Positions 34,388-56,707 of a stretch of DNA of 64,000 nucleotides are shown here, one piece after another (positions within the stretch are counted from its first letter, which is position 1; each line of letters opens with the position of its first letter). The position numbers were made by a program, and so were the translations under genes. The DNA lies in the IMG/VR virus record IMGVR_UViG_3300042558_004148, positions 1-64,000 of that record; one strand, written 5' to 3'. A model generated the notes under the pieces. The model made no database searches, was not told the origin of the DNA, and saw nothing but the letters and a program-made list of their open reading frames with translations.

Positions 34388-34747
34388 ATGGCTAAAGAAT
34401 ATGTTAAAAACAGCGAGCTTTTAGCAGCTGTAATAGAATCTAAAAGTAAGGGTCAACTTACACCCGATACAATAGATATGTTTATGTTAATGATAAACGG
34501 AATATCTAAAAAAATGTCATATAAGGATCCGGAAGATAAGGAGGATTGTATGGCATTTGCAATGGAGGATCTTTGTAAATATTGGAATAGATTTAACCCA
34601 GAGAAATCAAATAATCCATTTGCTTATTATACACAGATAGCTAAAAATGGATTTGCTAAGGGATGGAAAAAAATACATCCGCCAAAAAATCCTAAAACAA
34701 TACCTTTCAGCTATATAACTGGTGAGGATAATTCGTATAACGTTTAA
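34388..34747 (+). CDS. gp55: Late-transcription sigma factor (T4 gp55-like), very short (119 aa)
   Basis: EYVKNSELL and RFNPEKSNNPFAYYTQIAKN signature motifs. Confidence 0.8.
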   Translation: MAKEYVKNSELLAAVIESKSKGQLTPDTIDMFMLMINGISKKMSYKDPEDKEDCMAFAMEDLCKYWNRFNPEKSNNPFAYYTQIAKNGFAKGWKKIHPPKNPKTIPFSYITGEDNSYNV

Positions 34748-41503: not shown

Positions 41504-41508
41504 ATAGT

Positions 41509-42999: not shown

Positions 43000-44135
43000 T
43001 TAATATATTGGTTGACGGGAATTACATATTCCATAAGACGTTTGGCGTTTTTGGAGGATACGGGAAAGCTGATCCTGGTAAGATATTAAAATCTAAAAGC
43101 GAGCAAGGTGCTTTTATCAGGAAAGTTTCTACTGATTTGTGTTCCTCTCTTAAACTTTTGCCAACTGGTGGGAGAATGATATTTACTACTGATAGTAGGA
43201 GCTGGAGAAAAGACGTTGAGATAGAAGATGGTGGATATAAATCAGGTAGGGTCAGAGATGATGAAACTGATTGGACTATATTTTTTGAACTCATGAAATC
43301 TTTTGGAGATCATATGGAGAAGATGGGATTTATTTTTTCCAGAGTTGATGGTGCAGAGGGTGACGATCTTTTAATGTATTGGAGTAATTATTTCAATGGT
43401 AATGGTGAAAATTGTATTATTATAACAGGTGATAAAGATTTACATCAGTTATCTAGAAATACTGACAGCTCATGGACAGCAGTATGGAATAACAATTCTA
43501 AGAAAAATGTTCTATCGGTTCCCCAGGGATGGAAAGAATCTTGGCTAAATAGGGACGAGAGTGTTAGTATATTTAACATGGCTTCTGCTATTTCGCCTGA
43601 AAAAGAATCATTTAAGGTTTTTCTGAAGAAGGTTGAAATAGAGGAAATTGATAGTGACTTCTTCATATTGAATAAAGTGCTGGTTGGTGATAAGGGGGAT
43701 TCAGTACCTAGTGTCTGGGAAACTCTTAGCGGTACAAGAACTATGGGATTTACTCCTAAGAAAGCTGAATCGGTTCATGAGGCATTCAAATCCTCTGAAT
43801 GGAAATCTTTGGATTTTAAACAGATGCTAGATTCTGCAGATTTTCTGGATTGGCTAGCTGGAATGGTTCTAAGATCATCGAAATCTGTCGATAGCTCGGA
43901 TAATAGGAAAAAAGTAAAAGCAAACATTGAGAGAAATTTTAAACTTATGTGGCTTAATCAGTTAATGATACCTGATTTTGTTGCCTCTGGTTGTAATTTG
44001 GAAATAGAAAGAGGTATATCCCTACTTAGAAAACCAATAACACTAGACAGGATAAAGATATTAGAGGGAACCGAGTGGATTACCTCTGGTTACCAACCTA
44101 AAGGTTTTGATCCATTTGAACATATACTGGACTAA
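42996..44135 (+). CDS. 5'-3' exonuclease / RNase H (T4 Rnh, PolI-exo-like)
   Basis: LVDGN, D-SRSWRK, EGDD, TGDKDLHQL, GDKGDSVP acidic motifs. Confidence 0.88.
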   Translation: MINILVDGNYIFHKTFGVFGGYGKADPGKILKSKSEQGAFIRKVSTDLCSSLKLLPTGGRMIFTTDSRSWRKDVEIEDGGYKSGRVRDDETDWTIFFELMKSFGDHMEKMGFIFSRVDGAEGDDLLMYWSNYFNGNGENCIIITGDKDLHQLSRNTDSSWTAVWNNNSKKNVLSVPQGWKESWLNRDESVSIFNMASAISPEKESFKVFLKKVEIEEIDSDFFILNKVLVGDKGDSVPSVWETLSGTRTMGFTPKKAESVHEAFKSSEWKSLDFKQMLDSADFLDWLAGMVLRSSKSVDSSDNRKKVKANIERNFKLMWLNQLMIPDFVASGCNLEIERGISLLRKPITLDRIKILEGTEWITSGYQPKGFDPFEHILD

Positions 44136-44137
44136 CT

Positions 44138-44560
44138 ATGCAGCTTTTTGATATAATAAAGAATATATTTTCCACCAATAATAAAACGTGGGATCAAGTG
44201 GGTAGAATAGATAAGTCTAGAAATTTTTTCATGATTAATCGGATTATGGCTATTCAATTTCCGGTACAGGCAAACCAATTTAATAGAATGCGTATAGTAC
44301 CTGGTCCTGTAGTAGATTGGTGGAGAAGTACATTGTCTGGCAGATATTCGAAACCACCTAATTGGATATACACAAAAACAAAAAAGATATCATCTGAAGA
44401 TAAAATAAAGGAAACTAAGAATTTTGACCAGGTAGAGATCTTTATAAGGGAAAAATATTCTGTTTCAAAGAGGGAACTTTCCGATATAAAAAACTTTTAC
44501 CCTGATAGATATAATAAATGGATATCCGATGTTGCTGATCAGCTAGGTATTCAAAAATAA
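44138..44560 (+). CDS. Clamp loader small subunit (T4 gp62-like)
   Basis: FFMINRIM...ANQFN and WIYTKTKK patterns; located near gp44. Confidence 0.6.
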   Translation: MQLFDIIKNIFSTNNKTWDQVGRIDKSRNFFMINRIMAIQFPVQANQFNRMRIVPGPVVDWWRSTLSGRYSKPPNWIYTKTKKISSEDKIKETKNFDQVEIFIREKYSVSKRELSDIKNFYPDRYNKWISDVADQLGIQK

Positions 44561-44572
44561 GATATATAAGAG

Positions 44573-45109
44573 ATGAAGGGTAAAAACAGTAAGTTAATAG
44601 ACAAAGTTATTCTGAGTCTGGACTGGGATACAATTTTTGAGGTTAATAAATGCTTTAAAATAGGTGTCGGAGAGGGAATTTCAGGAATCCCTGGGCTTAA
44701 AAGGAAACCCTTTCTGACTGGGGTAACCAAAAATGATATAAAAAACGAGCTTAAAAATTTACTTAAGCACGTAATCGATAACGATATATCTGAATTTATA
44801 TACAGTCACTGGATGATTTTTTGGAATAATGCTGAATGGTCACTAGAGGAACTAAATAAGATAAAGGATGAGATGGATGATCCTGAAGATTATTACGATG
44901 ATCATTTGATAATAGATTCCACATTAGAGGTTATATATTCCCCACAGAGAGTATTAGCTATGGAACCAGTTTCCATAACCAGTATATCGGGTGAGGATTC
45001 AGATGAAAGTAAGCTAGAAGAAATGCTAAAGAAAGCTCTGGAAAATGAGCACTATGAATTGGCTTCAAAAATTAGGGATGTACTGAAGGTGCAGAAAAAC
45101 CAGCAATAA
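44573..45109 (+). CDS. Hypothetical protein with C-terminal UVR (UvrB/UvrC) motif
   Basis: LEEMLKKALENEHYELASKIRD; GATATATA at 44561-44568. Confidence 0.65.
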   Translation: MKGKNSKLIDKVILSLDWDTIFEVNKCFKIGVGEGISGIPGLKRKPFLTGVTKNDIKNELKNLLKHVIDNDISEFIYSHWMIFWNNAEWSLEELNKIKDEMDDPEDYYDDHLIIDSTLEVIYSPQRVLAMEPVSITSISGEDSDESKLEEMLKKALENEHYELASKIRDVLKVQKNQQ

Positions 45110-45127
45110 CAAAGGATACATACTCTA

Positions 45128-45610
45128 ATGAAACACTTAAAATCTATATACGAATTTGATTCTGCCTTTGGTGATAGCTACGGGTATGGAGGTGCTAATG
45201 GGGTTCTTAAAATAAACTATAAACCATTTAGCGATTTATCGGTATCTGTAGGACAGGATCCTAATATCGAAACAACTGTGAAGGGTTCACAATTTACTAT
45301 AGGTGATATAGTTATTGCTAGCCCTATAGATTCTGATTCTAAGAAGAAAGTAATTGGTGTGATAGTTAGATCATTTAGAAATCCTGATAATAAACAATAT
45401 AGGTATTTTATACAAGTTTATAATAAGGGTAAAGAAACTGAGAGAGTAATAGAGGTAAAATCAGATTCTATAAAATTTGCTCCAGGCGGGGAACATGGAA
45501 ACATGGAAACTGTATCTAAAATGAAGGCAAGCGATGTACCTGCTTCAGCATATAATTCAAAAACGGTATATAGTGCGAGTGAACTCGGGCTTGAAACTAC
45601 CGGTGGATAA
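45128..45610 (+). CDS. Late hypothetical protein, SH3/KOW-like, with capsid-targeting-like N-terminus
   Basis: MKHLKSIYEF start; FTIGDIVIA...VIGVIV beta-barrel; GATACATA at 45115-45122. Confidence 0.6.
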   Translation: MKHLKSIYEFDSAFGDSYGYGGANGVLKINYKPFSDLSVSVGQDPNIETTVKGSQFTIGDIVIASPIDSDSKKKVIGVIVRSFRNPDNKQYRYFIQVYNKGKETERVIEVKSDSIKFAPGGEHGNMETVSKMKASDVPASAYNSKTVYSASELGLETTGG

Positions 45611-45651
45611 GGAACCAAAACAGCTTTATACGGTACAATAATAAAAAGATT

Positions 45652-46551
45652 ATGGTATCAGGAAGCAATCCAAATATTTCATATTTAGGTTTACCTAAGG
45701 CTCTAGCACTAGGAAGTTTTTATATTAGATCCCACGAGGAAATATTAACCCTTATATTAGACCTTGCAAATACAAACTTTTCTATAGGATCCAATATGAT
45801 TTGTTTGGATCTTAATGAGATGGATTTCCACGAGGATTTTTTTAATACGGTCAGCGACGAGGAAAATCCTAAATTGTCCTCCATAATAGATTCCATAAAT
45901 TTAATATTAAATAAGAATTCAATTAGGGTATCCTTTTTCATAGGAAAAGAATATTTTATGGGCAGTCAATTAGAAGGTGTTAAGGAATCAACGATAAGAG
46001 TGATAAATTCAATCTCTGCACTGCTGGACTTAATTGGTGTGGATTATCCTTCGATAATAATTAGAATTGGATCAGCATATGGTAACAGGAAGCAAACAAT
46101 GTCTAATTTCTGTAATAGAATAAAATTACTAGATAAAAATGCAGTAAATAAATTATGCGTTACTAATGACGAAAAACCAAGTTTATTTTCTGTGACCGAT
46201 TTACTTACTGGAATATATTATGAAACTAAAATACCTATATGTTTTAGAACATTAGCTCATCATTTTAATAATGGTGGATTAAGTATAAGGGAAGCAATGT
46301 TTTTGAGTTCTTCCACATGGAAAGATGAACACGTTCCATTTTTTATACACTCTGAATCCGTTGATATTAATGAAGATGGCGTATCATTGTCACCTAATCC
46401 ATCAGCGTATTTAAAAAATAGAATACCCACTTTCGGTCTTTCCTGCGATATTATAATAGAATCTCCAGAAAGAGAAAATAGCTATATTCATTATATCAAA
46501 AATCAAAAATCCTTACCTCCCGTTGTAATTAATAAAATATCAGGAAAATAA
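45652..46551 (+). CDS. UV-damage endonuclease (UvdE/UvsE)-like protein with degenerate active site
   Basis: GSAYGNRK...FC, NDEK-x-SLFSV-x-DL, IPI-x-F, GGLS, STW, HSES scaffold motifs; the metal ligands appear substituted. Confidence 0.7.
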   Translation: MVSGSNPNISYLGLPKALALGSFYIRSHEEILTLILDLANTNFSIGSNMICLDLNEMDFHEDFFNTVSDEENPKLSSIIDSINLILNKNSIRVSFFIGKEYFMGSQLEGVKESTIRVINSISALLDLIGVDYPSIIIRIGSAYGNRKQTMSNFCNRIKLLDKNAVNKLCVTNDEKPSLFSVTDLLTGIYYETKIPICFRTLAHHFNNGGLSIREAMFLSSSTWKDEHVPFFIHSESVDINEDGVSLSPNPSAYLKNRIPTFGLSCDIIIESPERENSYIHYIKNQKSLPPVVINKISGK

Positions 46552-46601
46552 TTTTTTAATTCCGTTATAATATATTAAATTTACAGCTTAATGTAAATAA
46601 G

Positions 46602-47303
46602 ATGTTAAGAAAAGAAGCAATACACAATCTCCTATATTTTGATGTTGAAACTGCAGCATTGTATCCAAATATAGAAACCCTACATGACGAAAATCCAAGA
46701 CTTTATCATCTCTGGAGAAAGAGAGATGAATATTATAGAGGAGCTTATCCTGCATTAGCCAATGAGTCTGACGAATCGGTGTATAAACAGAAAGCAGGCT
46801 TGGAGCCGGAATTTTCAAGAGTTGTCTGTGTTTCATTTGGTTCTTTTACTGAGGACGGAGATCAAAAATATGTTTCCTTCTCTGGTAATGACGAAAGGGA
46901 AATATTAAATAAAGCAAACAAGGTTTTTAATAACGCTATGGCCAAGGGATGGAAACTTTGCGGACATAACATAAAAGGTTTCGACGTGCCTTGTTTGGGC
47001 AAGAGAATGATCTATAATGGTATAAATCCTTCCGGTAATCTTCAGATATGGGATAAGAAACCATGGGAAGTTCCTTATATGGACACATCGGATATATTTG
47101 CATTCGGAAGCTGGACACACCAGAAATACTTGAGTCTGGACCTTTTAACTTGTTCACTTGGTATAGATTCACCAAAGGGTGATATGGACGGATCTAAGGT
47201 TAATGATGTTTTCTGGATCGATAAGGATTTCGAAAAAATAGAATCATACTGTGAAGCTGATGTTAGAGCAGTTATGACAGTAATGGAAAAAATTTGTTTC
47301 TAG
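46602..47303 (+). CDS. 3'-5' exonuclease (DnaQ/PolB-exo-like)
   Basis: ExoI FDVET, ExoII GHNIKGFD, ExoIII YCEADV. Confidence 0.88.
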   Translation: MLRKEAIHNLLYFDVETAALYPNIETLHDENPRLYHLWRKRDEYYRGAYPALANESDESVYKQKAGLEPEFSRVVCVSFGSFTEDGDQKYVSFSGNDEREILNKANKVFNNAMAKGWKLCGHNIKGFDVPCLGKRMIYNGINPSGNLQIWDKKPWEVPYMDTSDIFAFGSWTHQKYLSLDLLTCSLGIDSPKGDMDGSKVNDVFWIDKDFEKIESYCEADVRAVMTVMEKICF

Positions 47304-47363: not shown

Positions 47364-47399
47364 AAAAGCTTTCCTTGATATATAGAGGAAAGCTTTTTT
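47364..47399 (+). terminator. Terminator hairpin whose loop carries the late-promoter motif
   Basis: 12-bp perfect stem AAAAGCTTTCCT/AGGAAAGCTTTT with loop TGATATATAG, then a T tract. Confidence 0.75.
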
Positions 47400-47400
47400 C

Positions 47401-48216
47401 GTGAATACAGTATTAGATTTTAATGATTTTTTAAATAATAATGGGATTGCTCTTAATGAAAGGGAGAATAGTCCATATTACCATGATGTGCTAAATCCAG
47501 TTTTTTGGACTCAGAAAAAAACAAAATCTGGTGAGATATCCTGGGTTTTTGACCAGAGAGTCAGAAGAAAACTTATTAGGATAGCGGAAGATTTTTATAC
47601 AAAATTTGAAGATATTCTGGGAGATAGAGCAATAAGGGACATTCAATTAACTGGATCATTAGCAAATTTTAACTACACTGATTTTTCTGATCTTGATGTT
47701 CATGTTCTTATTAACATGGATGGCATAGACGATGATAATCCAAAAATACTAAAATCCGCAATCGACGGTATTAAATTCGTATGGAATCTTAGACATAACA
47801 TAACAATAAGAGGTTATGATGTTGAACTATATCTGCAGGATCAGCATGAACCACATACGGCATCCGCATTGTTTTCTTTAAAAAATAATGATTGGATAAG
47901 AAAGCCTGTTTATAATTTTCCCGAGGTTGACGATATGGACGTGGAGAAAAAATATTCAGCCATAGTTTCGGATATAGAGGAATTACAGACAAGACTTATA
48001 ACCACGGACATTTTGCCATCAAATGCTAAGTCTTTATATAACAGAGCATCTAAACTAAAATCAAAAATTCAGAAAATGAGAAAAGAAGAGCTTGCTAAGG
48101 GCGGAGAAATGGCAATCGGTAATCTTGTTTTTAAAAAGCTTAGAAATTCTGGATATATAGAAAAATTAATAGATTTGATTTCCAAATCTTATGATAAAAT
48201 TTACACTGAAAAATAA
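47401..48216 (+). CDS. Pol-beta-superfamily nucleotidyltransferase
   Basis: LTGSLANFNY...SDLDVHV (GS...DxD) plus third Asp in YDVELY; GTG start. Confidence 0.85.
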   Translation: MNTVLDFNDFLNNNGIALNERENSPYYHDVLNPVFWTQKKTKSGEISWVFDQRVRRKLIRIAEDFYTKFEDILGDRAIRDIQLTGSLANFNYTDFSDLDVHVLINMDGIDDDNPKILKSAIDGIKFVWNLRHNITIRGYDVELYLQDQHEPHTASALFSLKNNDWIRKPVYNFPEVDDMDVEKKYSAIVSDIEELQTRLITTDILPSNAKSLYNRASKLKSKIQKMRKEELAKGGEMAIGNLVFKKLRNSGYIEKLIDLISKSYDKIYTEK

Positions 48217-48223: not shown

Positions 48224-50815
48224 ATGATAATATTATTACCAGCAGGAACTAGATATAAAATAGGAAATAATTTTCCTCTTATGACAATCCCGTTAGATAT
48301 GCCAAATGCTCAAAGTACTTCATTCGAAGATTTTCAGTGGTGGGCATTATCTTCAGATTTTCAAAAATGGTTAAAAAAGAATCCTAGAAAATGGGTGGCT
48401 GAATCTAACGATCTTGGTAAATATGAGGGATCTGTTTCGGAATATTTGAAAGAAAACTACAGCTTCTTAGAACCACTATACAATGATATTAATGAATCTG
48501 ATGTTCTGTCATTCGAAGATTTTTCTAGAGAAAAAATGGTTTTCGAAGATGAGCAGGGTGATGCTGATAGTGCGGAGTATAAAGAAGCTATAAAATTTCA
48601 CTTTGCATATAATAGTTTAAAAAGTAAAGGTAAGATAGTTGATTCAATGACCGCATCGGATATCAAGAAGGGTGACGATAAAGCGGTTTTCTTATTATTA
48701 GAGGATCCTGCTAACGGTGAAAACATGATGGAAACAATGAAAGCCTATAGAATGACGGGCTATATTGATGTTGACGGTAAATCTAAGATAAGACTCATTG
48801 ATGTTAGTGAAATGCTACCAGGCGGACCAATAAAGGACGACGAGAAAACTGAGGATGTTATAGGTAAGGTTGTACAGGATGCTGCAGTAATAGCTGCTGC
48901 TGGTGGAGTAGGACTTGTTCTTTATAGCGCTTTGAAAATTGCTGGAGGCGGATTAGCTGCTAGAGCTTTACTTAAAACGATACAAGGATTTTCTCCTAAT
49001 GCAGCTAGCGCAGGAGCTTCCGCTGCTCCTTCTCTTCTGGGTAAAATAAGAGCAGGTGGAGTTAAAGGTATTAAAAGTCTATGGGGAGGCGTTAAAGATA
49101 TCGCTACATTAAAAAATACAAGAGCTTTGGTAACCAGAGGGTTTAAAGGTGCTAAGGCAGCTTATACTTTAGGTAAAGTTGGAGTTGGTGGTGCTATTAA
49201 GGCTTTTGCTAAAGGAGTAACGAGAGGAGGTAGCAAACTAGGAAGTAGAGCAATACCTTTTGTTGGCGAGGTACTTATGATTATAGATGCTGTTGGATCT
49301 ACATGGAATTGGTACAGTGATAACCAGGCACCAAGATATGGTGAAGTTGAATCTTTTGCAAAAAATGAAATGAATCCAGCCAATCTTCCGGTTGGTGTTC
49401 CTATTACTGTATGTTGGTCACAACCAGCTGGTGGAGCTTTAGGTACAGGTATAAGTTTCCTATTCAGTAACGAAACTAGAACAACTGCGGAACTTATTAA
49501 GATAGGAGATAAAAATGGCGAGTCAATATTCATAATGACCCAGATTAACTCTAAGGAAGTCCAAAAGGAACTTGCAAGTCATGATTTAACTTTGATATCA
49601 TTGGATAATAGCAATGTAGTTAATGACCAGGCATCATCTAAGGAAGGTGTACTTGCTCAAATAGGTACAGCTATACAAAGAACTTTTGATAACGAGGATC
49701 TTGATTTTAAGATATCTCACGTAGACGGAATAAATGATATTGCTGCTATGTTTAATTTTCAAGGTATCTGTGACTGGAGCGAATTTGAAACTGCTTACCA
49801 GTCAGCTGGAGATCAGTTAATAGTAGTTGATCCGAATGCACCTGAAACTTATGAATTTTACTACAAGGATAATGAAGAAAATGTAGTAAACGTATCAGGT
49901 AGAATAGTATCAAATGATGAACTTAAAAATTCAAATCCGGAGGAACTTCAAAAAATATTCTATTCTGAGGAAATAGAAGGATCAGCAGAAAAAAAGAATG
50001 AAGAACATGACAATTCTGCTATTCTGGGTGAACTAATTAATGAATCCACAGTGATAACTAGTTTTGATGATTTCAGTGGTAGATTAGCGGGAATATACGA
50101 GAATAAGGATATTGATTCTAAAAAAGAAAAAACAACTCTTGAATTAAGTCGTGAGCAATCAAGTACTCCAGCAGAGGTTGCTGTATATGTAGTTACCGAG
50201 AGAGAATATGCAGATCCCGAACTTAGAAAATACAAAGTTGGTGTATTTAGAAACTTTATGATAAATGCAGATGATTATAAGGCTAAGGTTAATTCACCGA
50301 TTGATGTTGAGACGAATACAGTTAACGAAGATATAGATGAACCTAAAAGAGGAGTTTATGTATTTAAGAAAGAAGCAGATAAAGTTAAACCTAAGCCTAG
50401 CGAGGAAGAAGAAATTAAAAGAAATACCCAACCTTTAACTGATGAGGATCCTAAGCAGGATGATCAGAAAGTAAAGGATGATTATTACATAACCGTTGAT
50501 CCGAAGGACGTTATCATAAAGGATAAGAAGAATTCAACTGTAATAAGGGATAATAGTTTTGCTGGTGGTATTAATCTGGTTGATACCTTCCTTACTGATA
50601 AGGATAAGGAGATTATGAACATAGCAAATTGGAAAGCGGTATCATATGCTAAGGCATCATTGGATACAAGAGGAGATATAATAGAGGTTAAGATAAAAAA
50701 TAAATTTGCACCATTTGGTGATAAGGTAAGAAAGTTTAAAGTATCTGATGGTGAAGCATTCGAGATAGCTAAAAAATTTGCTACTGAAGTTGAAAGTAGA
50801 ATAAAATATCAATAA
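48224..50815 (+). CDS. Large late protein with Gly/Ala-rich hydrophobic segments (candidate internal or ejection protein)
   Basis: AAVIAAAGGVGLVLYSALKIAGGGLAARALL and AIPFVGEVLMIIDAVG segments; internal INES...SF[ED]DF motifs. Confidence 0.55.
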   Translation: MIILLPAGTRYKIGNNFPLMTIPLDMPNAQSTSFEDFQWWALSSDFQKWLKKNPRKWVAESNDLGKYEGSVSEYLKENYSFLEPLYNDINESDVLSFEDFSREKMVFEDEQGDADSAEYKEAIKFHFAYNSLKSKGKIVDSMTASDIKKGDDKAVFLLLEDPANGENMMETMKAYRMTGYIDVDGKSKIRLIDVSEMLPGGPIKDDEKTEDVIGKVVQDAAVIAAAGGVGLVLYSALKIAGGGLAARALLKTIQGFSPNAASAGASAAPSLLGKIRAGGVKGIKSLWGGVKDIATLKNTRALVTRGFKGAKAAYTLGKVGVGGAIKAFAKGVTRGGSKLGSRAIPFVGEVLMIIDAVGSTWNWYSDNQAPRYGEVESFAKNEMNPANLPVGVPITVCWSQPAGGALGTGISFLFSNETRTTAELIKIGDKNGESIFIMTQINSKEVQKELASHDLTLISLDNSNVVNDQASSKEGVLAQIGTAIQRTFDNEDLDFKISHVDGINDIAAMFNFQGICDWSEFETAYQSAGDQLIVVDPNAPETYEFYYKDNEENVVNVSGRIVSNDELKNSNPEELQKIFYSEEIEGSAEKKNEEHDNSAILGELINESTVITSFDDFSGRLAGIYENKDIDSKKEKTTLELSREQSSTPAEVAVYVVTEREYADPELRKYKVGVFRNFMINADDYKAKVNSPIDVETNTVNEDIDEPKRGVYVFKKEADKVKPKPSEEEEIKRNTQPLTDEDPKQDDQKVKDDYYITVDPKDVIIKDKKNSTVIRDNSFAGGINLVDTFLTDKDKEIMNIANWKAVSYAKASLDTRGDIIEVKIKNKFAPFGDKVRKFKVSDGEAFEIAKKFATEVESRIKYQ

Positions 50816-50883: not shown

Positions 50884-52854
50884 ATGCCAACAACCCAAAA
50901 GCTTAATGAAGATTTAGTTTTCATCCTTGAGAGACAGGAGAGAGTACTTGAATCTAAGAAGACAGATTCTGAGGATGATTATGTTCTGGAAGGTATAGCA
51001 GCTGTTTTCGGAAAGGAAAACAATAATAATAGAATATACGAGGAAAATGAATATTTACCTCATTTGGACTATCTTAAAGACAAAATTGCACAGAAGAGAT
51101 TAGTTGGTGAATTAGATCATCCTGAAAAATTCGACGTTTCTCTTAAGAACATTTCACATATCATCGAAGATCTTGCATACGATAAGGATAAGAGAGAACT
51201 TAAAATAAAAGTTAGACTTTTAGATACGCCAGCAGGTATTATAGCTAAAAAATTAGTTGATGCCGGAGTACCACTTTCAATATCATCAAGAGCAGCTGGT
51301 TCGGTTGGCAATGATAAGAAGGTTCAGATCAAGAAAATATTTACATATGATTTAGTTGCTGATCCTGGTTTTCAGGATGCACAATTGGAAAGAGTATACG
51401 AAAGTGCAGGATTTAGTTTCGAAGACGTTTATAAAATGAGAAATAATACAATTCTAAACGGATTAACTTGTGTTAATGAATCTTTCGGTCTTAAAAATGA
51501 ATCTTCAATGAAGATATATAAAGTTGAAAATAACGAAGAATTCAACAATCTCGTAACAAAAACAGAAAAAAATAAAGAAATCCTTATGGAGAATAAAGAA
51601 TTTGTTACTGCTGATGACCTAAATCAATATTCTATTTTCTTGAAGAAAGAAATGGATTCAATGAAATCGGCTATAGCAGAAATTAACGAAAAGAGAGACT
51701 CAATTCAAGAATCTGAAAAAACATCTAATGAGGATGTTGTTACAGCATTAGAAGAAAGAGTAGCTAAATTGGAAAAATATTCTGAGTACTTAGCTGAAAA
51801 CTTGGATAATGCAATTAAGTATGGAGAATACGTTGCTGAAAATCTAGATCAAAACATAACTTATTCTAAGTATTTAGCTGAGAATTTGGATAAAAATATT
51901 TCTTATTCTAAATATTTAGCTGAGAATGTTGACAAATCTATATCTTATTCTGAATATGTAGCAGAGAGTGTAGATAAGAACATAGAATATTCTAAATATT
52001 TAGCTGAAAAAGTAGATCAAAATATTTCTTATTCTGAATACTTAGCTGAGAATGTAGATAATAGTATTTCTTACAGTGAACATTTAGCAGAAAACCTAAA
52101 TAAAGGTATTGCTTATACTGAATACGTTGCAGAGAAACTAAATGATGGTATCGAATACGCAGAGTATTTAGGTGAGAACTTGAATAAGAATATACAATAT
52201 TCAGACTATTTAGCTGAAAATCTAAACAAAGGTTTAGATTATTCTGAATACTTAGCTGAAAAAGTTAAAAGATCTATATCTTACAGTGAATATATAGCAG
52301 AAAGTTTAAACAATTCTGATATGAAAGCAGTAGGACAAGATTTAATGGAAAGTGCATCAGTATCAGCATCAGCAGGTTTAAACGAATCTGGATTTGCAGG
52401 TAATTACGATAACCTTTCAGACAAAATTGATAGTTTGGTAGAATCAGTTAAAACACAAAAAACTGAATCAAATATAAACGAAGCTTCAAAATCATTTGAA
52501 GCGCCAGCCAACACACAAAAGGCACAAGAATCAGCTCTTAATGAAAACGAGAGCACAACAAAAACAGGTCTTAAGTTTATTGACGAAATGCCTGAAGAAT
52601 TTGCACAAGTTTGGGAATCACTTAATGAAGGACACAAGCAATCAATAGTTGCTCAGAGTAACTTCTATAGATTAGATTCTCCTTACCAAATCAAAAACTT
52701 CTGGTCTACAAGACAACTTGGAACTAAAACAGTTGGAGTTCAAAAATTGAACGAGAGCGAAGAAACAGTGCCAAGTGCAACAACTCAAGGTTATTCAAGC
52801 GATTATATGGCTTCAATAGCTGCTGCACTAGAGCAAAAATTTCCAAAAAGATAA
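50884..52854 (+). CDS. gp21: Prohead protease (gp21-like) fused to scaffold/core protein (gp22-like)
   Basis: N-terminal NNNNRIY, GELDHP (catalytic His), ISSRAAGS (catalytic Ser), YDLVADPG; C-terminal coiled-coil repeats; directly upstream of the major capsid gene. Confidence 0.88.
   Translation: MPTTQKLNEDLVFILERQERVLESKKTDSEDDYVLEGIAAVFGKENNNNRIYEENEYLPHLDYLKDKIAQKRLVGELDHPEKFDVSLKNISHIIEDLAYDKDKRELKIKVRLLDTPAGIIAKKLVDAGVPLSISSRAAGSVGNDKKVQIKKIFTYDLVADPGFQDAQLERVYESAGFSFEDVYKMRNNTILNGLTCVNESFGLKNESSMKIYKVENNEEFNNLVTKTEKNKEILMENKEFVTADDLNQYSIFLKKEMDSMKSAIAEINEKRDSIQESEKTSNEDVVTALEERVAKLEKYSEYLAENLDNAIKYGEYVAENLDQNITYSKYLAENLDKNISYSKYLAENVDKSISYSEYVAESVDKNIEYSKYLAEKVDQNISYSEYLAENVDNSISYSEHLAENLNKGIAYTEYVAEKLNDGIEYAEYLGENLNKNIQYSDYLAENLNKGLDYSEYLAEKVKRSISYSEYIAESLNNSDMKAVGQDLMESASVSASAGLNESGFAGNYDNLSDKIDSLVESVKTQKTESNINEASKSFEAPANTQKAQESALNENESTTKTGLKFIDEMPEEFAQVWESLNEGHKQSIVAQSNFYRLDSPYQIKNFWSTRQLGTKTVGVQKLNESEETVPSATTQGYSSDYMASIAAALEQKFPKR
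51778..52323 (+). repeat. 13 tandem 14-aa (42-nt) repeats YS[EK]Y[LV]AE[NK][LV][DN]xxI[SE]
   Basis: YSEYLAENLDNAIK through YSEYIAESLNNSDM, read directly from the translation. Confidence 0.92.
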
Positions 52855-52870: not shown

Positions 52871-54574
52871 ATGAAATTGATCAACGAACAAGAAATCTAT
52901 GATACATGGTCTCCGATTATCGAGAGCAAAGCTGGTATCACAGAAGAAGGAAAAAAAGGATGGTTGACTAAATATTGTCATTATCATTCATTAAACGAGT
53001 CTGCAGGTGCTTATAACACTTTAGGAGTTGTTAACGGTATGGGTGCAGTTGCGCCTCCAACATACCCAGGAATGGGTTCATTCTCAGGTTCTAATGCTAA
53101 CGCTGGTTTCTATAACACAGCAAACCAAGGATCTGGTGACAAATTCCCATCATTATTACCATTAGCTATTCAGGTAGCTGCTAAGACTGTAGGTTTTGAT
53201 ATCGTTCCTGTTATCCCTATGTCAGGACCAACTGGTATCTTATCTTACTTAGATTACGTATACTCAGGTGGTAAACTTGCTGGTGCTACATCTGCTACTT
53301 CAGGAGATTCATTAGCTAAAGCTCCTACAATGATTAAATTCCCAGTTGCACAAGGATCTTCTGCAGGTCTTACAGGTGCTACTGCTGGTTCATTCCAAGT
53401 AGGTGCTTCTTATACAGTTACTAATGGAGGTGTATTAACACTTAAATTCGTAGGTTTATCAAGAATCGATGGTTTCCCAATCTACGAGATTGAAAACATT
53501 ACGGATGGTTACAACGTAGCTGGTATTATCACAGCTTCAGGAAGCTTCCAAGTTACTGGAGGTTCTCCAGCTTCAACTCTTTTTACTGCAGGTTCTGCAC
53601 AATTAGTTAAAGCTTTAGAAGATCATATCCAAGGTTTCTCTGGTGCTGGTTTCAACAACACTACAGATTGGCAAGGTCCTTACGTAGATGGTACTAAAAC
53701 TTACAACCCTATGTTAAGAGGAGTTGGTGAGTCTACTTACTACAACTCAATGGGTCTTTCTACTTTCACTAAATTCGTGGAGGCTGAAACTTTCCAAGTT
53801 GCTGCTTCAGTTACAACTGAGCAAATCCAAGATCTTAACAAACAATTCGGTATCGACGTTATCTCAATGATCGAGAACGCATTGGTTAATGAGGTTTCTC
53901 AAGCAATTAACAAACACATCTTATCAAGAGCATTCGCTTTAGGTTGGTCTAACCATAACCAATTCTTCAATGTTGAAAACCAAAACCTTAACTTGAACTT
54001 AGTTCTTGGTGGTGCTGCTGGTACAACTTCAGCTTATGTTAACAAATCGGATGCTACACAATCTATGCCTATCCCAGCTGGTCCAGCTACAGGAGGTTAC
54101 GAGAACTTATCAACTCTACAAAGAAGATTATTCTCAAGAATCCTTGCTGGTGCTAACGTGGTAGCTAATAGAGGTAGAAGAGGTCCTGCTAATTTCGTAG
54201 TAACGAATGCTGCAGTTGCAAGTGCACTTCAAGATATTTCTCAGTTCACTTTCGCTCCATTCTCTAATACACTTACTCAAAATAACGGTACTTTATACCC
54301 TGTAGGTTCTCTTGCTGGTATGACAGTTTACGTAGATCAGAACATGAACTACAGCGATACAAGAGTATTAATTGGTAGAAAAGGTGGTGATGATGAGCCA
54401 GGATTAAAATTCATGCCTTACATGATGGCAGAATCAATTCAGACTATCTCTGAAGGTACTATGTCACCTAAAATCGCAGTTAAATCTAGATATGCTTTAG
54501 TAGAAGCTGGTTTCTTACCTGAAACTATGTACTTAACATTATACGTTAACGTACCTGCTGGTGGTTTAGCATAA
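52871..54574 (+). CDS. gp23: Major capsid protein (T4 gp23-like)
   Basis: GFDIVPVIPMSGPTG, EVSQAINKHIL, ANRGRRGPANF, YPVGSL...VYVD, KSRYALV. Confidence 0.93.
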   Translation: MKLINEQEIYDTWSPIIESKAGITEEGKKGWLTKYCHYHSLNESAGAYNTLGVVNGMGAVAPPTYPGMGSFSGSNANAGFYNTANQGSGDKFPSLLPLAIQVAAKTVGFDIVPVIPMSGPTGILSYLDYVYSGGKLAGATSATSGDSLAKAPTMIKFPVAQGSSAGLTGATAGSFQVGASYTVTNGGVLTLKFVGLSRIDGFPIYEIENITDGYNVAGIITASGSFQVTGGSPASTLFTAGSAQLVKALEDHIQGFSGAGFNNTTDWQGPYVDGTKTYNPMLRGVGESTYYNSMGLSTFTKFVEAETFQVAASVTTEQIQDLNKQFGIDVISMIENALVNEVSQAINKHILSRAFALGWSNHNQFFNVENQNLNLNLVLGGAAGTTSAYVNKSDATQSMPIPAGPATGGYENLSTLQRRLFSRILAGANVVANRGRRGPANFVVTNAAVASALQDISQFTFAPFSNTLTQNNGTLYPVGSLAGMTVYVDQNMNYSDTRVLIGRKGGDDEPGLKFMPYMMAESIQTISEGTMSPKIAVKSRYALVEAGFLPETMYLTLYVNVPAGGLA

Positions 54575-54667: not shown

Positions 54668-55810
54668 ATGAAAAATTTACCTTCATTCGAAGAATATAAA
54701 AAATACGATCATTTTCTGGAAAGAACCGAAAGTGATTTAGTTGCTGAACTTAGATCACTCGAAACTGCTGATCCATATCATTCTGTTAATGAGGGACAAA
54801 TTATGAATTCGCTAAAAAATACATTATCCAAGTTCTTTTTGGGTTCAGCTTCCAGAGTAAGTATGCTGGACGAGGCTAGAAAGATAATACTTGAGCTTGA
54901 GCTTGATTTAATAGAGAAAAGAAATGAATTCGAATTAGCTGTTGATAAAATAAATTCACAGATTGACGAATTAAGTAAAACCGAAGAGAATGATAAAGTC
55001 GTTGCACTTGGTAAAGAAAGAGAAGCTAAAGCTAAAGAAATGGAGGCTTATATAAAGGCTCAGAGACTTAAAATTAAAAAATCCAAAGAAGTTGCTAATA
55101 AATTAGTTGATGGTAATGCCAGAAGAAGAGAATATCTTATGGCAGGATATTCTGAGGATGAGATTGCTATTGCTGAATTGGAATATAAATTAGCTAAGGA
55201 AAGATCTGAAGAATCATCAGTTCTTAAAGATTATGAGGATAAGATAAAAACTGCCAAAGCTGAATATGAGGAAAAAAGTTCGGATCTTAAATCAAAAATG
55301 GAGGATGTAGAAAAGGAAAAAGCGGACGATGAATCAACCGGTAATTTAAGAGTGGATCCACGAGAGGAGAAAAAGAAAATCTCCAGCAGAAAAGGTAGAG
55401 ATATTATACAAAGAAAGAATGAATTGGAAAAAGATATAGCTGATATTAGATCGTCCATTGAGAGAAAGCTAAATAGATTATCTGATAAAATAAGCAAATC
55501 AAAAACACCAATTAGTGCTAGATCCGTGAATCCATATAAGATGGATCTTTTAGAATTGGCATCATCCCTTGATTCAAAAACAAATCTTCTAGCACTATTT
55601 AGAAATTTAGGTAAAACAGAGAATGAAATAACTAACAGTCTTAAAGGTGAATCAGATTTTACTAAGATGGCAAATCAGATAAATCAAGTTATAAGTGATG
55701 GTAACGATGCTAATTCTGGTACTAAGAAGATCATAAGTGAAGTATTTTCAGGGGGTAATACAGTTACTGTTGATATCATAAATTCAGCTAGGAAAAAACT
55801 AAATAAATAA
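54668..55810 (+). CDS. Coiled-coil late protein (candidate internal head protein)
   Basis: MKNLPSFEEY start, SVNE site, charged helical sequence. Confidence 0.6.
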   Translation: MKNLPSFEEYKKYDHFLERTESDLVAELRSLETADPYHSVNEGQIMNSLKNTLSKFFLGSASRVSMLDEARKIILELELDLIEKRNEFELAVDKINSQIDELSKTEENDKVVALGKEREAKAKEMEAYIKAQRLKIKKSKEVANKLVDGNARRREYLMAGYSEDEIAIAELEYKLAKERSEESSVLKDYEDKIKTAKAEYEEKSSDLKSKMEDVEKEKADDESTGNLRVDPREEKKKISSRKGRDIIQRKNELEKDIADIRSSIERKLNRLSDKISKSKTPISARSVNPYKMDLLELASSLDSKTNLLALFRNLGKTENEITNSLKGESDFTKMANQINQVISDGNDANSGTKKIISEVFSGGNTVTVDIINSARKKLNK

Positions 55811-55816
55811 TAAATA

Positions 55817-56707
55817 ATGACTCTTAAATTTAAAGAATGGAATGAGCTGAATGAAGCTAATATCTTTGATAAGGTTAAAGATTGGTTTAGTGTCAATTTC
55901 GGAGGTGCCCTAAATAAGATGGAGAATCTAATAACTGAATATAGATCTGCCGAGGAAGAGTATATTGATGAGTGGGAAAAGGTTAATATAGAATTGGATA
56001 AACTAGATCTACAAAAGGATCAGACCAAATCGGATCCTGCTGAATATAAGAAAATCGAAAGATACGTACAAAGAAATCAGGAATTGCTTTCTAATATGAA
56101 GAAATCACATGTTAAGAAGATAGATCACATAATGGTCAAGGTAAAATCCCTAATAAATGACAATGCTAAACTTAGAACATACTGGGAAGTTAATAAGACA
56201 CGAGTTGATTCGGAGATAGCTGAAGACATGTACAAAAGATCCAAAGATCTTGCTGACGAGACATTGTCTAGAGACCTTTATAATAAATACAAGGATTCTG
56301 TATTAAAAGCAAAGAAAAAGGATGATGAATTCAAGGAAAAGTATGGTGATCTATTAAAGGGTTCTTATAAAAAAACTCAGACCGCTCAACAAAAAACTAC
56401 CTCAAAATCTGGTATATCGGAGGCAACTCTAGATCTTTACATAGCCATGTCACTTAGTGAATTTACTAAGGAAATAGAATCTCTGGATCCTAAGGAGAGA
56501 AGAGAATTGACAAATCTTCTGATAAAGAACCGAAATGAGCTATATGTTCAGATGGATATGGAAAGAGAAAATATAAACTCTTTGATATCTAAGGGCCAAT
56601 TAACAAAAGAGGAGGCTTCCAAAGAACTAAAAGACATCAGAGAGAAGCACATGAGTGATATAAGAGAATTAAGATCTAAAATAACAATATCTAGAAAGAA
56701 TGCTTAA
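55817..56707 (+). CDS. Coiled-coil late protein (candidate internal head protein), related to 54668
   Basis: MTLKFKEWNELNE start; FF/WF...G...[ML]D/N pattern followed by a charged coiled coil, as in 54668. Confidence 0.6.
   Translation: MTLKFKEWNELNEANIFDKVKDWFSVNFGGALNKMENLITEYRSAEEEYIDEWEKVNIELDKLDLQKDQTKSDPAEYKKIERYVQRNQELLSNMKKSHVKKIDHIMVKVKSLINDNAKLRTYWEVNKTRVDSEIAEDMYKRSKDLADETLSRDLYNKYKDSVLKAKKKDDEFKEKYGDLLKGSYKKTQTAQQKTTSKSGISEATLDLYIAMSLSEFTKEIESLDPKERRELTNLLIKNRNELYVQMDMERENINSLISKGQLTKEEASKELKDIREKHMSDIRELRSKITISRKNA

What the first reader, a model, noticed from the sequence alone, without database searches (positions are those of the whole stretch)
47401..48216. Pol-beta-family nucleotidyltransferase that looks virion-packaged
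Seen: an intact GS/DxD/D catalytic set, a late promoter, a capsid-targeting-like N-terminus with an LNE site, and tight translational control (previous finding). Established: T4 packages and injects Alt, an ADP-ribosyltransferase; this superfamily includes CD-NTases, protein AMPylases and tRNA CCA-adding enzymes. Inference: an injected enzyme acting at the start of infection, for example host-protein nucleotidylation, tRNA repair or interference with nucleotide-signal defences.
Basis: inference. Interest (0 to 1): 0.6.

Follow-up and report, generated by a model that had tools for sequence, protein, structure and literature searches.

The report
Capsid-addressed nucleotidyltransferase of a huge phage
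A 373-kb freshwater phage with a T4-like head encodes a late-expressed nucleotidyltransferase carrying the same short N-terminal "address tag plus protease cut site" that phage T4 uses to load proteins into its capsid, so the enzyme is probably delivered into the host with the DNA, although what it modifies is still unknown.

Summary
The ORF at 47401-48216 is real: 271 aa, GTG start, about 4,300 relatives at 50% clustering, nearly all viral. It has an intact Pol-beta catalytic set: G85-S86, D97-x-D99 and E142 (the third acid is Glu, not Asp). A phage-specific promoter motif, GATATATAG, lies 15 nt upstream. That motif also precedes the tail sheath, head protease, tail fibre-like and endolysin-like genes.

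Residues 1-20 are a flexible add-on ending in L18-N19-E20. The leader pattern [FY]-x-x-[FY]-[LIV]-x-E covers the four positions shown experimentally to matter in the T4 capsid targeting sequence MKTYQEFIAE. About 15-30 other ORFs of the same genome share it, including adenylate kinase, ATP-grasp, SLT and CHAP proteins. The pattern also recurs 13 times in the scaffold-like tail of the S77 prohead protease, two genes downstream.

A 33%-identical homologue, cyanophage S-CREM2 ORF156, was detected by mass spectrometry in purified virions. Packaging is therefore well supported (about 0.7).

The acceptor is unresolved. Fold matches are generic (Z at most 6.2). Fusions in relatives (Nudix, 2H/Acb1, GNAT, adenylate kinase) and the ANT-like two-domain layout favour a nucleotide-like small molecule. 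RNA 3' ends and host proteins come next. A CCA-repair role is unlikely, because the phage has its own PF01743 enzyme.

The parts
47364..47397 (+). Hairpin: 13-bp stem (47364-47376 pairing with 47385-47397) with an 8-nt loop GAUAUAUA, followed by U residues. Read as a terminator-like insulator after the 3'-5' exonuclease gene.
   Evidence: dG -17.5 kcal/mol, z -4.87, 0 of 200 shuffles as stable; conserved in L019, with compensatory arms in L021
47377..47385 (+). GATATATAG, the phage-specific (late-type) promoter motif, 15 nt before the start codon
   Evidence: 44 of 59 genome sites lie in sense orientation within 70 nt upstream of ORFs, against 2.8 expected; downstream genes include tail sheath, tail fibre-like, endolysin-like and virion structural protein; head protease; invariant in 4 relatives
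47401..47460 (+). Leader or propeptide, residues 1-20 (MNTVLDFNDFLNNNGIALNE). F7 and F10 are candidate targeting residues. L18-N19-E20 (47452-47460) is the candidate prohead-protease site, with cleavage predicted between E20 and R21.
   Evidence: T4 CTS determinants from PMC9026906 and PMC8442874
47461..47934 (+). Pol-beta-type nucleotidyltransferase core, residues 21-178. It consists of an N-terminal beta-hairpin (LNPxxW motif) followed by an alpha/beta NTase fold.
   Evidence: model pLDDT 92, pTM 0.87; best matches are minimal NTases, TENT5, MNT, PAP/TUTases, ANT and CdnE, Z 5-6.2; 29 of 91 relatives hit PF01909
47653..47658 (+). G85-S86 of the hG[GS] motif
   Evidence: invariant or nearly invariant
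47689..47697 (+). D97-L98-D99, the metal-binding DxD, followed by conserved H101
47824..47826 (+). E142, the third catalytic carboxylate, on strand 139-147
47923..48213 (+). C-terminal three-helix bundle, residues 175-271, carrying conserved basic and polar residues (R227, N241, K245, R248). Presumed to bind the NTP or the acceptor.
48224..50815 (+). 863-aa ORF of unknown family, 8 nt after the NTase stop codon and probably co-transcribed. Syntenic in all close relatives examined.
50884..52854 (+). T4 gp21-type (S77) prohead protease fused to a scaffold-like C-terminal region. It has its own GATATATAA promoter, and its N-terminus reads MPTTQKLNE|D.
51778..52302 (+). 13 tandem 14-residue repeats Y-S-E/K-Y-L-A-E-N-L-D-K-N-I-S. 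Each contains the same [FY]xx[FYH][LIV]xE unit as the leaders.
52871..54574 (+). gp23-like major capsid protein. Conserved N-terminal MKLINE|Q and ...YHSLNE|SAGAY are candidate propeptide cleavage sites.
54668..56707 (+). Two ORFs after the capsid gene that have leader-like N-termini (MKNLPSFEEYKKYDHFLE..., MTLKFKEWNELNE...). The first has a GATATATAG promoter.
34388..34747 (+). gp55-like late sigma factor, a candidate reader of the GATATATAR promoters
   Evidence: E 8.3e-10 against S-CREM2 gp153

Best explanation
The gene encodes a catalytically intact but divergent Pol-beta-superfamily nucleotidyltransferase, made late in infection as a pro-enzyme.

Proposed sequence of events:
1. Transcription starts from the GATATATAG promoter, which sits in the loop of a hairpin that ends transcription from the upstream repair genes. 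The gene is therefore expressed together with the head genes that follow it (863-aa protein, protease/scaffold, capsid).
2. The 20-residue N-terminal leader works like the T4 capsid targeting sequence. Its aromatic pair (F7, F10) takes the protein into the scaffolding core of the prohead. The core is itself built of 13 repeats of the same Y-x-x-Y-L-A-E unit.
3. The S77 prohead protease cuts after L18-N19-E20. This leaves the mature enzyme (R21-K271) free inside the capsid, next to a cohort of similarly tagged proteins (adenylate kinase, ATP-grasp enzyme, SLT and CHAP wall hydrolases).
4. On infection the enzyme enters the cell with the DNA and, using host NTPs, transfers an NMP onto a hydroxyl group of a host target.

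What is shown: the ORF, the motifs, the fold class, the promoter statistics, the sharing of the leader, the synteny, and a homologue in virions.
What is inferred: targeting, cleavage at E20, and ejection.
My guess for the acceptor: a nucleotide-like small molecule such as an immune signal or an NAD-derived compound about 0.35, an RNA 3' end about 0.25, a host protein about 0.2.
For: Enzyme:
- The G-S, D-x-D and E residues are invariant or nearly invariant.
- The core model has pLDDT 92 and its best structural matches are all NTases.
- 29 of 91 diverse relatives hit PF01909 and 18 hit the PAP palm domain.

Late expression:
- The GATATATAR motif is 16-fold enriched upstream of ORFs.
- It precedes the tail sheath, head protease, tail fibre-like, endolysin-like and virion structural genes.
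- A gp55-like sigma factor is present.
- The motif and the hairpin are conserved in relatives.

Leader:
- It is low-confidence and flexible in the model.
- It is optional across the family: some relatives start at the enzyme core.
- The h-x-E motif is kept in 113 of 115 close relatives and 37 of 48 distant ones.
- A scoring matrix built only from NTase-family leaders finds 15 other ORF N-termini in this genome at 10 bits or more, against 2.6 +/- 1.5 in composition-preserving shuffles.
- [LIV]NE is 2.3-fold enriched at residues 5-25 (p = 4e-5), while control tripeptides are not.
- Leader-bearing ORFs are associated with the late promoter (odds ratio 8.5, p = 1.7e-7).
- The conserved positions coincide with T4 IPIII CTS residues 4 and 7 (targeting) and 8 and 10 (processing).

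Protease and scaffold:
- The S77 protease lies two genes downstream and carries 13 repeats of the same motif.
- The capsid-protein propeptide has conserved LNE|S.

Other cargo: SLT, CHAP, endolysin-like, adenylate kinase and ATP-grasp proteins carry the leader.

Direct precedent: S-CREM2 ORF156 (126012-126725) is the homologue (33% identity, E 1e-30). It was detected in CsCl-purified virions with 6 unique peptides (PMC10665884, Table 3). Its N-terminus reads MKKLISE|L.

Acceptor:
- The best full-length Foldseek hits are two-domain small-molecule O-nucleotidyltransferases (AAD(9), ANT(4'), AadA, LinB) and CdnE.
- Fusions in relatives include Nudix, 2H/Acb1, GNAT, adenylate kinase, 5'-nucleotidase and a HIGH-type NTase.
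- Cytidylyltransferase-like genes lie nearby in S-CREM2, Cr30 and L026.
Against: - There is no proteomic or transcript evidence for this phage itself. It is known only from metagenomes.
- In the window protein the canonical F-x-x-F-L-x-E is broken (F-N-D-F-L-N-N), and the Glu comes 7 residues later.
- In T4-like cyanophages and in Cr30 the homologue sits among replication-type genes (DSL-LC02, S-CRM01, Cr30) or near the gp55 late-sigma gene (S-B68, S-CREM2), not among head genes.
- The S-CREM2 virion list has 52 proteins, including several unexpected enzymes, so carry-over cannot be excluded.
- The synteny with head genes is shared by a single clade and may simply reflect overall collinearity.
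- Structural similarity to every characterised NTase is weak (Z at most 6.2, TM about 0.2-0.35), so the acceptor class rests on a handful of fusions.
Confidence: 0.62

Rival explanations
1. The enzyme is not packaged. It is a cytoplasmic late enzyme, and the N-terminal segment is an ordinary amphipathic helix or a sequence that favours translation, common at the N-termini of this AT-rich phage's proteins. Its position beside the head genes is just clade-wide collinearity.
For: - A loose regular expression for the leader is barely enriched at N-termini (53 of 514 against 28 of 343 interior windows).
- Homologues in DSL-LC02, S-CRM01 and Cr30 lie among replication genes.
- The window's leader deviates from the canonical spacing.
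- There are no proteomic data for this phage.
Against: - Composition-preserving shuffles do not reproduce the leader matches (15 against 2.6).
- [LIV]NE is enriched at N-termini, but [LIV]ND and [LIV]NK are not.
- The leader associates with the late promoter.
- The motif recurs in the scaffold repeats and at the capsid-protein propeptide.
- Wall hydrolases, typical ejection proteins, carry it.
- The S-CREM2 homologue is found in virions.
Confidence: 0.2
2. The enzyme is a packaged RNA 3'-end nucleotidyltransferase (poly(A)/poly(U)-polymerase-like, or RNA-end repair). It would tail host RNAs to speed their decay, or heal RNA ends damaged by host ribonucleases.
For: - The PAP/TUTase palm model PF22600 hits 18 of 91 relatives.
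- TENT5, Tailor, PAP, Trf4 and TUT matches have Z 4.4-6.
- 2H phosphoesterase fusions occur in relatives.
- Jumbo phages are known to use Pol-beta NTases in RNA repair (PMC7824862).
- The C-terminal bundle is basic.
Against: - The genome already has a PF01743 CCA/PAP-type enzyme and RNA ligases elsewhere, unlinked to this gene.
- There is no RlaP signature.
- No ligase or polynucleotide-kinase fusions were seen.
- The structural matches are no better than those to non-RNA NTases.
Confidence: 0.25
3. The enzyme is a packaged protein AMPylase (DrrA/GlnE- or MntA-like). It would nucleotidylate a host protein at the start of infection, by analogy with ADP-ribosylation of RNA polymerase by T4 Alt, or it would neutralise a HEPN-type abortive-infection toxin.
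For: - There are weak SidM_N/DrrA matches over the G-S...D-x-D region (E 0.02-0.3 for the window protein; below 1e-3 in 4 of 91 relatives).
- MNT antitoxins and minimal NTases are among the best structural matches (Z 5.5-6.2).
- T4 Alt provides a precedent for an injected protein-modifying enzyme (PMC9026906).
Against: - The matches cover only the universal catalytic motif.
- None reaches a curated threshold.
- No HEPN partner or target is evident.
- The fusion partners are nucleotide-metabolism domains rather than protein-recognition domains.
Confidence: 0.2

Closest known systems
T4 internal proteins IPI/IPII/IPIII and Alt (CTS-bearing, gp21-processed, ejected capsid proteins)
   Same: - A short N-terminal propeptide of 10-20 residues, with aromatic residues three apart, followed by [LI]-x-E.
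- A gp21-family (S77) protease and a gp23-like capsid protein encoded next to it.
- A late promoter and a gp55-like sigma factor.
- An enzyme as cargo, as with Alt.
- The gene sits just upstream of the protease gene, where T4 has the core genes 67 and 68 (T4 gene order from my own knowledge).
   Different: - The cargo is a Pol-beta nucleotidyltransferase, not an ADP-ribosyltransferase or a small basic protein.
- There is no sequence homology to the mature IPs or to Alt.
- The leader consensus prefers Asn at P2 (h-N-E).
- In this protein the cut site lies 7 residues beyond the canonical position.
- The tag appears on many more proteins (about 15-30).
- The scaffold is fused to the protease and is made of repeats of the tag-like unit.
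- Packaging and cleavage are not demonstrated for this phage.
Synechococcus phage S-CREM2 ORF156 / gp156 (and its orthologues in S-CRM01, S-B68 and Cr30)
   Same: - Homologous over 85% of the length (33% identity, E 1e-30).
- The same G-[GS], D-x-D and E motifs and the same C-terminal GE..ENLxFKxLRNxGY motif.
- An N-terminal [LI]-S-E seven residues from the start.
- Detected in purified virions by mass spectrometry.
   Different: - Shorter leader (7 residues).
- The gene lies near gp55 and a virion cytidylyltransferase, not beside the head protease.
- Annotated only as a hypothetical protein.
- No activity is known.
ANT-type O-nucleotidyltransferases (AAD(9), ANT(4')/KNTase, AadA, LinB)
   Same: The same two-domain layout: an N-terminal Pol-beta NTase domain plus a C-terminal helical domain, at about 250-270 aa. 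These are the best full-length Foldseek hits (6xz0, E 7.5e-4, probability 0.92).
   Different: - TM-scores are only about 0.2 and sequence identity is 11-14%.
- No Pfam or NCBIfam match to these families.
- The extra N-terminal beta-hairpin with the LNPxxW motif is absent from ANTs.
- The C-terminal domain here is a three-helix bundle.
- The family is virus-specific.
CD-NTases (CdnE, CdnC, CdnD) and non-canonical poly(A)/(U) polymerases (TENT5, Tailor, TUT7)
   Same: They share the Pol-beta palm with G-S, D-x-D and a third acid. Structural matches to the core have Z 4.4-6.
   Different: - The characteristic second lobe of these families is missing.
- PADLOC gives no CD-NTase hit.
- The matches are no better than those to minimal NTases.
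Giant-phage ejection proteins processed by gp175-type proteases (phiKZ, 201phi2-1, SPN3US)
   Same: Many head-internal proteins carry N-terminal propeptides that are cut after Glu by a T4-gp21-related protease and are then ejected into the cell (PMC5694885).
   Different: Those propeptides are mostly longer than 100 residues and the cleavage motif is S/A/G-x-E. Here the leaders are short and T4-like, with a hydrophobic P3 residue.

Membership tests
Pol-beta superfamily nucleotidyltransferase (NTP_transf_2-like) | hG[GS] motif followed 9-13 residues later by [DE]h[DE]h | tested here: met
   L83-T-G85-S86 ... S96-D97-L98-D99-V-H101. These are invariant or nearly invariant in alignments A1, A3 and A4.
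Pol-beta superfamily nucleotidyltransferase (NTP_transf_2-like) | Third catalytic carboxylate on a later beta-strand | tested here: met
   E142 lies on strand 139-147. It is invariant in A1 and A3 and nearly invariant in A4.
Pol-beta superfamily nucleotidyltransferase (NTP_transf_2-like) | Match to the curated Pfam model above its gathering score | tested here: not met
   The window protein scores 14.6 bits against PF01909, below the 21-bit cut-off. Relatives do pass: P0216 scores 23.7 bits and P0236 scores 25.9 bits, and 29 of 91 hit at E below 1e-3. Membership therefore holds by transitivity.
Pol-beta superfamily nucleotidyltransferase (NTP_transf_2-like) | Alpha/beta NTase fold | tested here: met
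   The core model has pLDDT 92. The top structural matches are NTases (2rff Z 6.2, TENT5B Z 5.9, 1ylq Z 5.8, MNT Z 5.5), but all are weak.
T4-type CTS-bearing, protease-processed capsid-internal proteins | N-terminal propeptide of 10-20 residues with targeting residues equivalent to IPIII positions 4 and 7 | tested here: met
   F7 and F10 are spaced as Y4 and F7 are in MKTYQEFIAE. The pattern is shared by about 15 or more other ORFs, well above shuffles.
T4-type CTS-bearing, protease-processed capsid-internal proteins | [LI]-x-E cleavage motif ending the propeptide, in an accessible segment | tested here: met
   L18-N19-E20 has pLDDT below 50 and is kept in 113 of 115 close relatives. It is offset by 7 residues from the canonical position in this protein.
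T4-type CTS-bearing, protease-processed capsid-internal proteins | Cognate gp21-family prohead protease and scaffolding core in the same phage | tested here: met
   ORF 50884-52854 hits Peptidase_S77 at 1.1e-7 and phrog_207 at 4.6e-37. It has 13 scaffold-like repeats, and a gp23-like capsid protein follows.
T4-type CTS-bearing, protease-processed capsid-internal proteins | Late expression | tested here: inconclusive
   The promoter motif is shared with structural and lysis genes, but no transcript data exist.
T4-type CTS-bearing, protease-processed capsid-internal proteins | Presence in virions, N-terminal processing, and ejection into the host | not testable with these tools
   Only a homologue has virion mass-spectrometry evidence: S-CREM2 ORF156, 6 peptides.
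CD-NTase (CBASS cyclic-oligonucleotide synthases) | cGAS/DncV-like bilobed fold and a match to CD-NTase profiles | tested here: not met
   PADLOC gives only PDC-S09 at 2.4e-4 and no Cdn model. Foldseek to CdnE gives E 3.7e-3 to 1.3e-2 and TM 0.2-0.33.
Class II CCA-adding enzyme / poly(A) polymerase (PF01743) | Match to the PolyA_pol head domain | tested here: not met
   There is no hit in the window protein or in 91 relatives. The genome has a separate PF01743 gene at 218324-218743.
RlaP (RNA-ligase-associated Pol-beta NTase, PF10127) | Match to the RlaP profile and linkage to an RNA ligase | tested here: not met
   There is no PF10127 hit in the protein, in its relatives or in the genome. The RNA ligases lie more than 75 kb away.
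ANT-type aminoglycoside/lincosamide O-nucleotidyltransferases | NTase domain plus C-terminal helical substrate domain, with family-level sequence or structure similarity | tested here: inconclusive
   The architecture is alike and these are the best full-length Foldseek hits (E 7.5e-4, TM 0.23). There is no sequence-family match.
DrrA/GlnE-type protein adenylyltransferases | Significant match beyond the G-x11-D-x-D core | tested here: inconclusive
   SidM_N gives E 0.023, and DrrA chains give E 0.12-0.5 over about 50 residues only.

The most novel reading that the evidence does not exclude
The leader is a portable copy of one scaffold repeat. This would be a general address tag that lets this widespread clade of huge freshwater T4-like phages load a whole arsenal of enzymes into the capsid (NTase, adenylate kinase, ATP-grasp ligase, several wall hydrolases). 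Under this reading the NTase is an injected counter-defence enzyme that nucleotidylates, and so inactivates, a nucleotide-derived immune signal or NAD-related metabolite before any phage gene is expressed.
Probability: 0.15. Interest if true: 0.85.

Novelty: new variant of a known kind. Interest (0 to 1): 0.62.

Why it matters
What large phages carry into the cell besides DNA is largely unknown for uncultured lineages. A short, recognisable tag of the form [FY]xx[FY][LIV]xE, tied to a T4-type protease, would allow the injected proteome of such phages to be read directly from sequence. In this genome it points to a set of enzymes rather than only structural or basic proteins.

The nucleotidyltransferase belongs to a very large, virus-specific and uncharacterised family (about 4,300 clusters at 50% identity). 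One member has already been seen in virions without being recognised as an enzyme. Cultured phages with homologues (S-CREM2, S-CRM01, Cr30, Maribacter Molly/Colly) make its activity and its delivery directly testable.

Tried and rejected
- Full-length VIA-align searches were dominated by generic three-helix bundles and gave no information about function.
- A second, core-only model gave cleaner but still generic NTase matches.
- Sequence searches of solved structures found only the DrrA catalytic motif, at E above 0.06.
- NCBIfam gave nothing. PADLOC gave only a weak PDC-S09 hit.
- I tested whether the long C-terminal extensions of relatives fused to the NTase (P0133, P0139, P0155) correspond to the downstream 863-aa ORF. 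They do not.
- The N-terminal extensions of ten relatives have no Pfam family.
- A host-type bipartite Bacteroidota promoter (TTTG...TAnnTTTG) was not found upstream of any ORF, so I make no host claim from promoters.
- The consensus terminator scan did not flag the hairpin, because its U-run is partly inside the stem.
- Expression evidence: no run on record as RNA holds the stretch. The two possible RNA runs contain only diverged fragments kept as contigs, so nothing can be said about transcription.
- The S-CRM01 virion paper is not held.
- The first Atlas call failed. The repeat showed only that the family is viral and of NTP_transf_2 type.
- The loose regular expression for the leader proved too permissive to show N-terminal enrichment. 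The matrix-with-shuffles test and the [LIV]NE test were used instead.
Full report
**What is there**

The window is the first 64 kb of a 373,485-bp virus record with direct terminal repeats. Near-identical DNA occurs in lake, river and estuary metagenomes from 17 studies.

ORF 47401-48216 (+ strand, GTG start, 271 aa) is a real gene.
- The word search finds 962 relatives, many of them full length.
- A profile search of 1.84 billion representatives finds 4,301 clusters at E of 1e-3 or better.
- It belongs to phrog_36119, function unknown, at 2.4e-40.
- ESM-Atlas neighbours are 94-100% viral and partly carry PF01909.
- Named phage relatives are uncultured 630-735-kb phages, Lak megaphages, cluster-C T4-like cyanophages (S-CREM2, S-CRM01, S-B68, DSL-LC02/03 and others), Maribacter phages Molly and Colly, and Caulobacter phage Cr30.

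**The enzyme**

The Pol-beta signature is intact: L-T-G85-S86, S96-D97-L-D99-V-H101, and E142 on a later strand. These residues are invariant or nearly invariant among 28 close relatives and across 91-112 diverse ones.

The window protein itself stays below Pfam's cut-off (PF01909, 14.6 bits against 21). However, 29 of 91 relatives hit PF01909, 18 hit the PAP palm model PF22600, and 9 hit Polbeta.

- The full-length model (pLDDT 82) shows a disordered N-terminus, an NTase domain and a C-terminal three-helix bundle.
- A core-only model reaches pLDDT 92.
- Structural neighbours are all nucleotidyltransferases, but none is close: minimal NTase 2rff Z 6.2, TENT5B Z 5.9, MNT Z 5.5, Tailor Z 5.5, PAP Z 5.2, ANT(4') Z 5.1, CdnE Z 5.0.
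- Foldseek on the full model favours two-domain small-molecule O-nucleotidyltransferases (AAD(9), E 7.5e-4) and CdnE.

This is a distinct, virus-specific branch of the superfamily. It is not a CD-NTase, not a class II CCA/PAP enzyme, and not RlaP. The genome has its own PF01743 enzyme and RNA ligases elsewhere.

**Promoter and hairpin**

The 97-nt gap before the gene holds GATATATAG at 47377-47385. GATATATA is the most enriched 8-mer in upstream regions of this genome. Of 59 GATATATA[AG] sites, 44 lie in sense orientation within 70 nt upstream of an ORF, against 2.8 expected.

Genes that follow the motif include:
- the tail sheath;
- the head protease;
- a tail fibre-like protein;
- an endolysin-like protein;
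- a virion structural protein.

The neighbouring ligase, clamp-loader, FEN, UvdE and exonuclease genes lack the motif. A gp55-like late sigma factor is encoded at 34388-34747. I therefore read the motif as this phage's late-type promoter. This rests on inference from gene classes, not on transcripts.

The motif forms the loop of a 13-bp hairpin (dG -17.5 kcal/mol, z -4.9). Relatives keep both the motif and the hairpin, and one relative shows compensatory changes in the arms. A transcript started from this promoter would lack the 5' arm. Read-through from the upstream repair genes would meet a terminator-like structure. The likely effect is insulation of the gene from earlier transcription, rather than translational control as such.

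**The leader**

Residues 1-25 are modelled with low confidence, and residues 18-22 have pLDDT below 50. Across the family this segment is an optional add-on.
- Some representatives start directly at the conserved LNPxxW core.
- Others carry unrelated N-terminal domains.
- Many carry M-x-x-V-x-x-F-x-x-F-[LIV]-x-E.
- A hydrophobic-x-Glu motif precedes the core in 113 of 115 close relatives and 37 of 48 distant ones.

The same leader heads many other ORFs of this genome. Examples are MEKLKSFSEFLAE, MGKIKSFNEYINE, MESKIKAFNEFLNE, MENIKIYSDFVNE and MLNINSYEDFLFE.

| Test | Result |
|---|---|
| Matrix built only from NTase-family leaders, scored on the other ORFs' N-termini (10 bits or more) | 15 observed, 2.6 +/- 1.5 in composition-preserving shuffles (maximum 8 in 200) |
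| [LIV]NE at residues 5-25 | 2.3-fold enriched, p = 4e-5; [LIV]ND, [LIV]NK and the reversed tripeptide are not |
| Leader-bearing ORFs against the late promoter | odds ratio 8.5, p = 1.7e-7 |

Carriers of the leader include an adenylate kinase (ADK, 6e-37), an SLT transglycosylase, a CHAP peptidase, an endolysin-like protein and an ATP-grasp enzyme. The two ORFs after the capsid gene also carry it.

**Link to the head machinery**

Two genes downstream lies a T4 gp21-type S77 protease.
- Its C-terminal half consists of 13 tandem 14-residue repeats, Y-S-E/K-Y-L-A-E-N-L-D-K-N-I-S.
- Its N-terminus reads ...KLNE|D.
- The gp23-like capsid protein that follows has a conserved ...YHSLNE|SAGAY.

The T4 capsid targeting sequence is MKTYQEFIAE (PMC8442874). 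Suppressor mapping placed targeting at residues 4 and 7 and processing at residues 8 and 10 (PMC9026906). These are the four positions conserved here: [FY]-x-x-[FY]-[LIV]-x-E.

In the window protein the aromatic pair is F7 and F10. The Glu of the canonical spacing is replaced, and L18-N19-E20 follows 7 residues later.

The gene order exonuclease, NTase, large unknown ORF of about 830-930 aa, protease, capsid is kept in four relatives at 55-67% identity. This may reflect clade-wide collinearity.

**Independent experimental support**

S-CREM2 ORF156 (126012-126725) is the homologue (33% identity, E 1e-30). In Table 3 of PMC10665884 it is listed among proteins found by mass spectrometry in CsCl-purified virions, with 6 unique peptides and 15.2% coverage. 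It is annotated only as a hypothetical protein. Its N-terminus is MKKLISE|LKL. A 7-residue propeptide is the length removed from T4 Alt.

**Function**

Packaging is the well-supported part. The acceptor is not identified. Relatives are fused to:
- Nudix (3);
- 2H / Acb1 / LigT phosphoesterases (3 + 2 + 1 hits);
- GNAT (3);
- adenylate kinase (1);
- 5'-nucleotidase (1);
- a HIGH-type NTase (1);
- M23 peptidase or peptidoglycan-binding domains (2).

Cytidylyltransferase-like genes lie nearby in S-CREM2 (itself a virion protein), Cr30 and one metagenomic contig.

Together with the ANT-like architecture, this favours a nucleotide-like small molecule as acceptor (my estimate 0.35). RNA 3' ends come next (0.25), then host proteins (0.2). 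The M23 fusions, and the wall hydrolases that carry the leader, fit co-delivery with ejection proteins.

**Comparison and novelty**

This works like the T4 CTS / internal-protein system, with Alt as the enzyme precedent, but there are differences.
- The cargo is a Pol-beta nucleotidyltransferase.
- The tag appears on many enzymes.
- The scaffold seems to be made of repeats of the tag-like unit and is fused to the protease.
- The phage is a 373-kb uncultured freshwater virus.

Among the 12 top-ranked papers in a search combining 'capsid targeting' with jumbo or huge phages or cyanophages, none contained that phrase. Earlier searches did find the SPN3US paper, which concerns long phiKZ-type propeptides.

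I class this as a new variant of a known kind.

**Limits**

- There are no proteomic or transcript data for this phage.
- Cleavage at E20 and ejection are inferred.
- The leader-scaffold complex prediction could not be run.

Noticed in passing
window 51778-52302 (within ORF 50884-52854): The S77 prohead protease is fused to 13 exact-period (14 aa) repeats, Y-S-E/K-Y-L-A-E-N-L-D-K-N-I-S. Each repeat carries the same [FY]xx[FYH][LIV]xE unit as the cargo leaders and the T4 CTS. This suggests a scaffold built of tag-like, protease-cleavable units.
   Followed up: partly
G000 (whole genome): for example 142406-143035, 154303-155766, 287360-288181(-), 288840-289667(-), 314559-315953(-), 358247-359521, 361089-361580: About 15-30 ORFs start with the leader M-x-x-[ILV]-K-x-[FY]-x-[ED]-[FY]-[LIV]-x-E. 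They include an adenylate kinase, an ATP-grasp (RimK-like) enzyme, SLT and CHAP wall hydrolases and an endolysin-like protein. This is a candidate injected proteome.
   Followed up: partly
window 52871-54574: The gp23-like capsid protein has conserved MKLINE|Q and ...YCHYHSLNE|SAGAY (residue 43) in four relatives. These are likely propeptide cleavage sites, which would make the propeptide shorter than T4's 65 residues.
   Followed up: partly
window 48224-50815: An 863-aa ORF with no family match, 8 nt after the NTase stop codon. It has a Gly/Ala-rich hydrophobic stretch at about residues 215-345, and relatives conserve F-x-D-F-Q-W-W near the N-terminus. It may be a head-core or ejection protein.
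   Followed up: partly
window 34388-34747: A small ORF similar to T4-type late sigma factor gp55 (E 8.3e-10 against the cyanophage S-CREM2 protein).
   Followed up: partly
whole genome; window examples at 19101, 29745, 31940, 44561, 47377, 50850, 54635, 61567: GATATATA[AG] behaves as a phage-specific promoter: 59 sites, 44 of them correctly oriented upstream of ORFs. In several cases it sits only 3-6 nt before the start codon, which would give leaderless or nearly leaderless mRNAs.
   Followed up: partly
G000 218324-218743; 210926-211465; 125316-125936; 201471-201893: The phage has a separate PF01743 (CCA-adding / poly(A) polymerase type) gene and two or three RNA-ligase-like genes. No RlaP gene is present.
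   Followed up: no
window 40144-47303: A replication and repair block (ATP-dependent DNA ligase, clamp loader, guanylate-kinase-like gene in relatives, FEN/5'-3' exonuclease, UVR-motif protein, UvdE-like endonuclease, 3'-5' exonuclease) is inserted between the portal gene and the head-core genes.
   Followed up: partly
window 60133-61542: An asparagine-synthase-like gene (GATase plus Asn_synthase domains) lies downstream of the head module.
   Followed up: no
P0001 (98% identical relative): One public source names the near-identical protein 'ribosomal protein L17', which is an evident mis-annotation.
   Followed up: no
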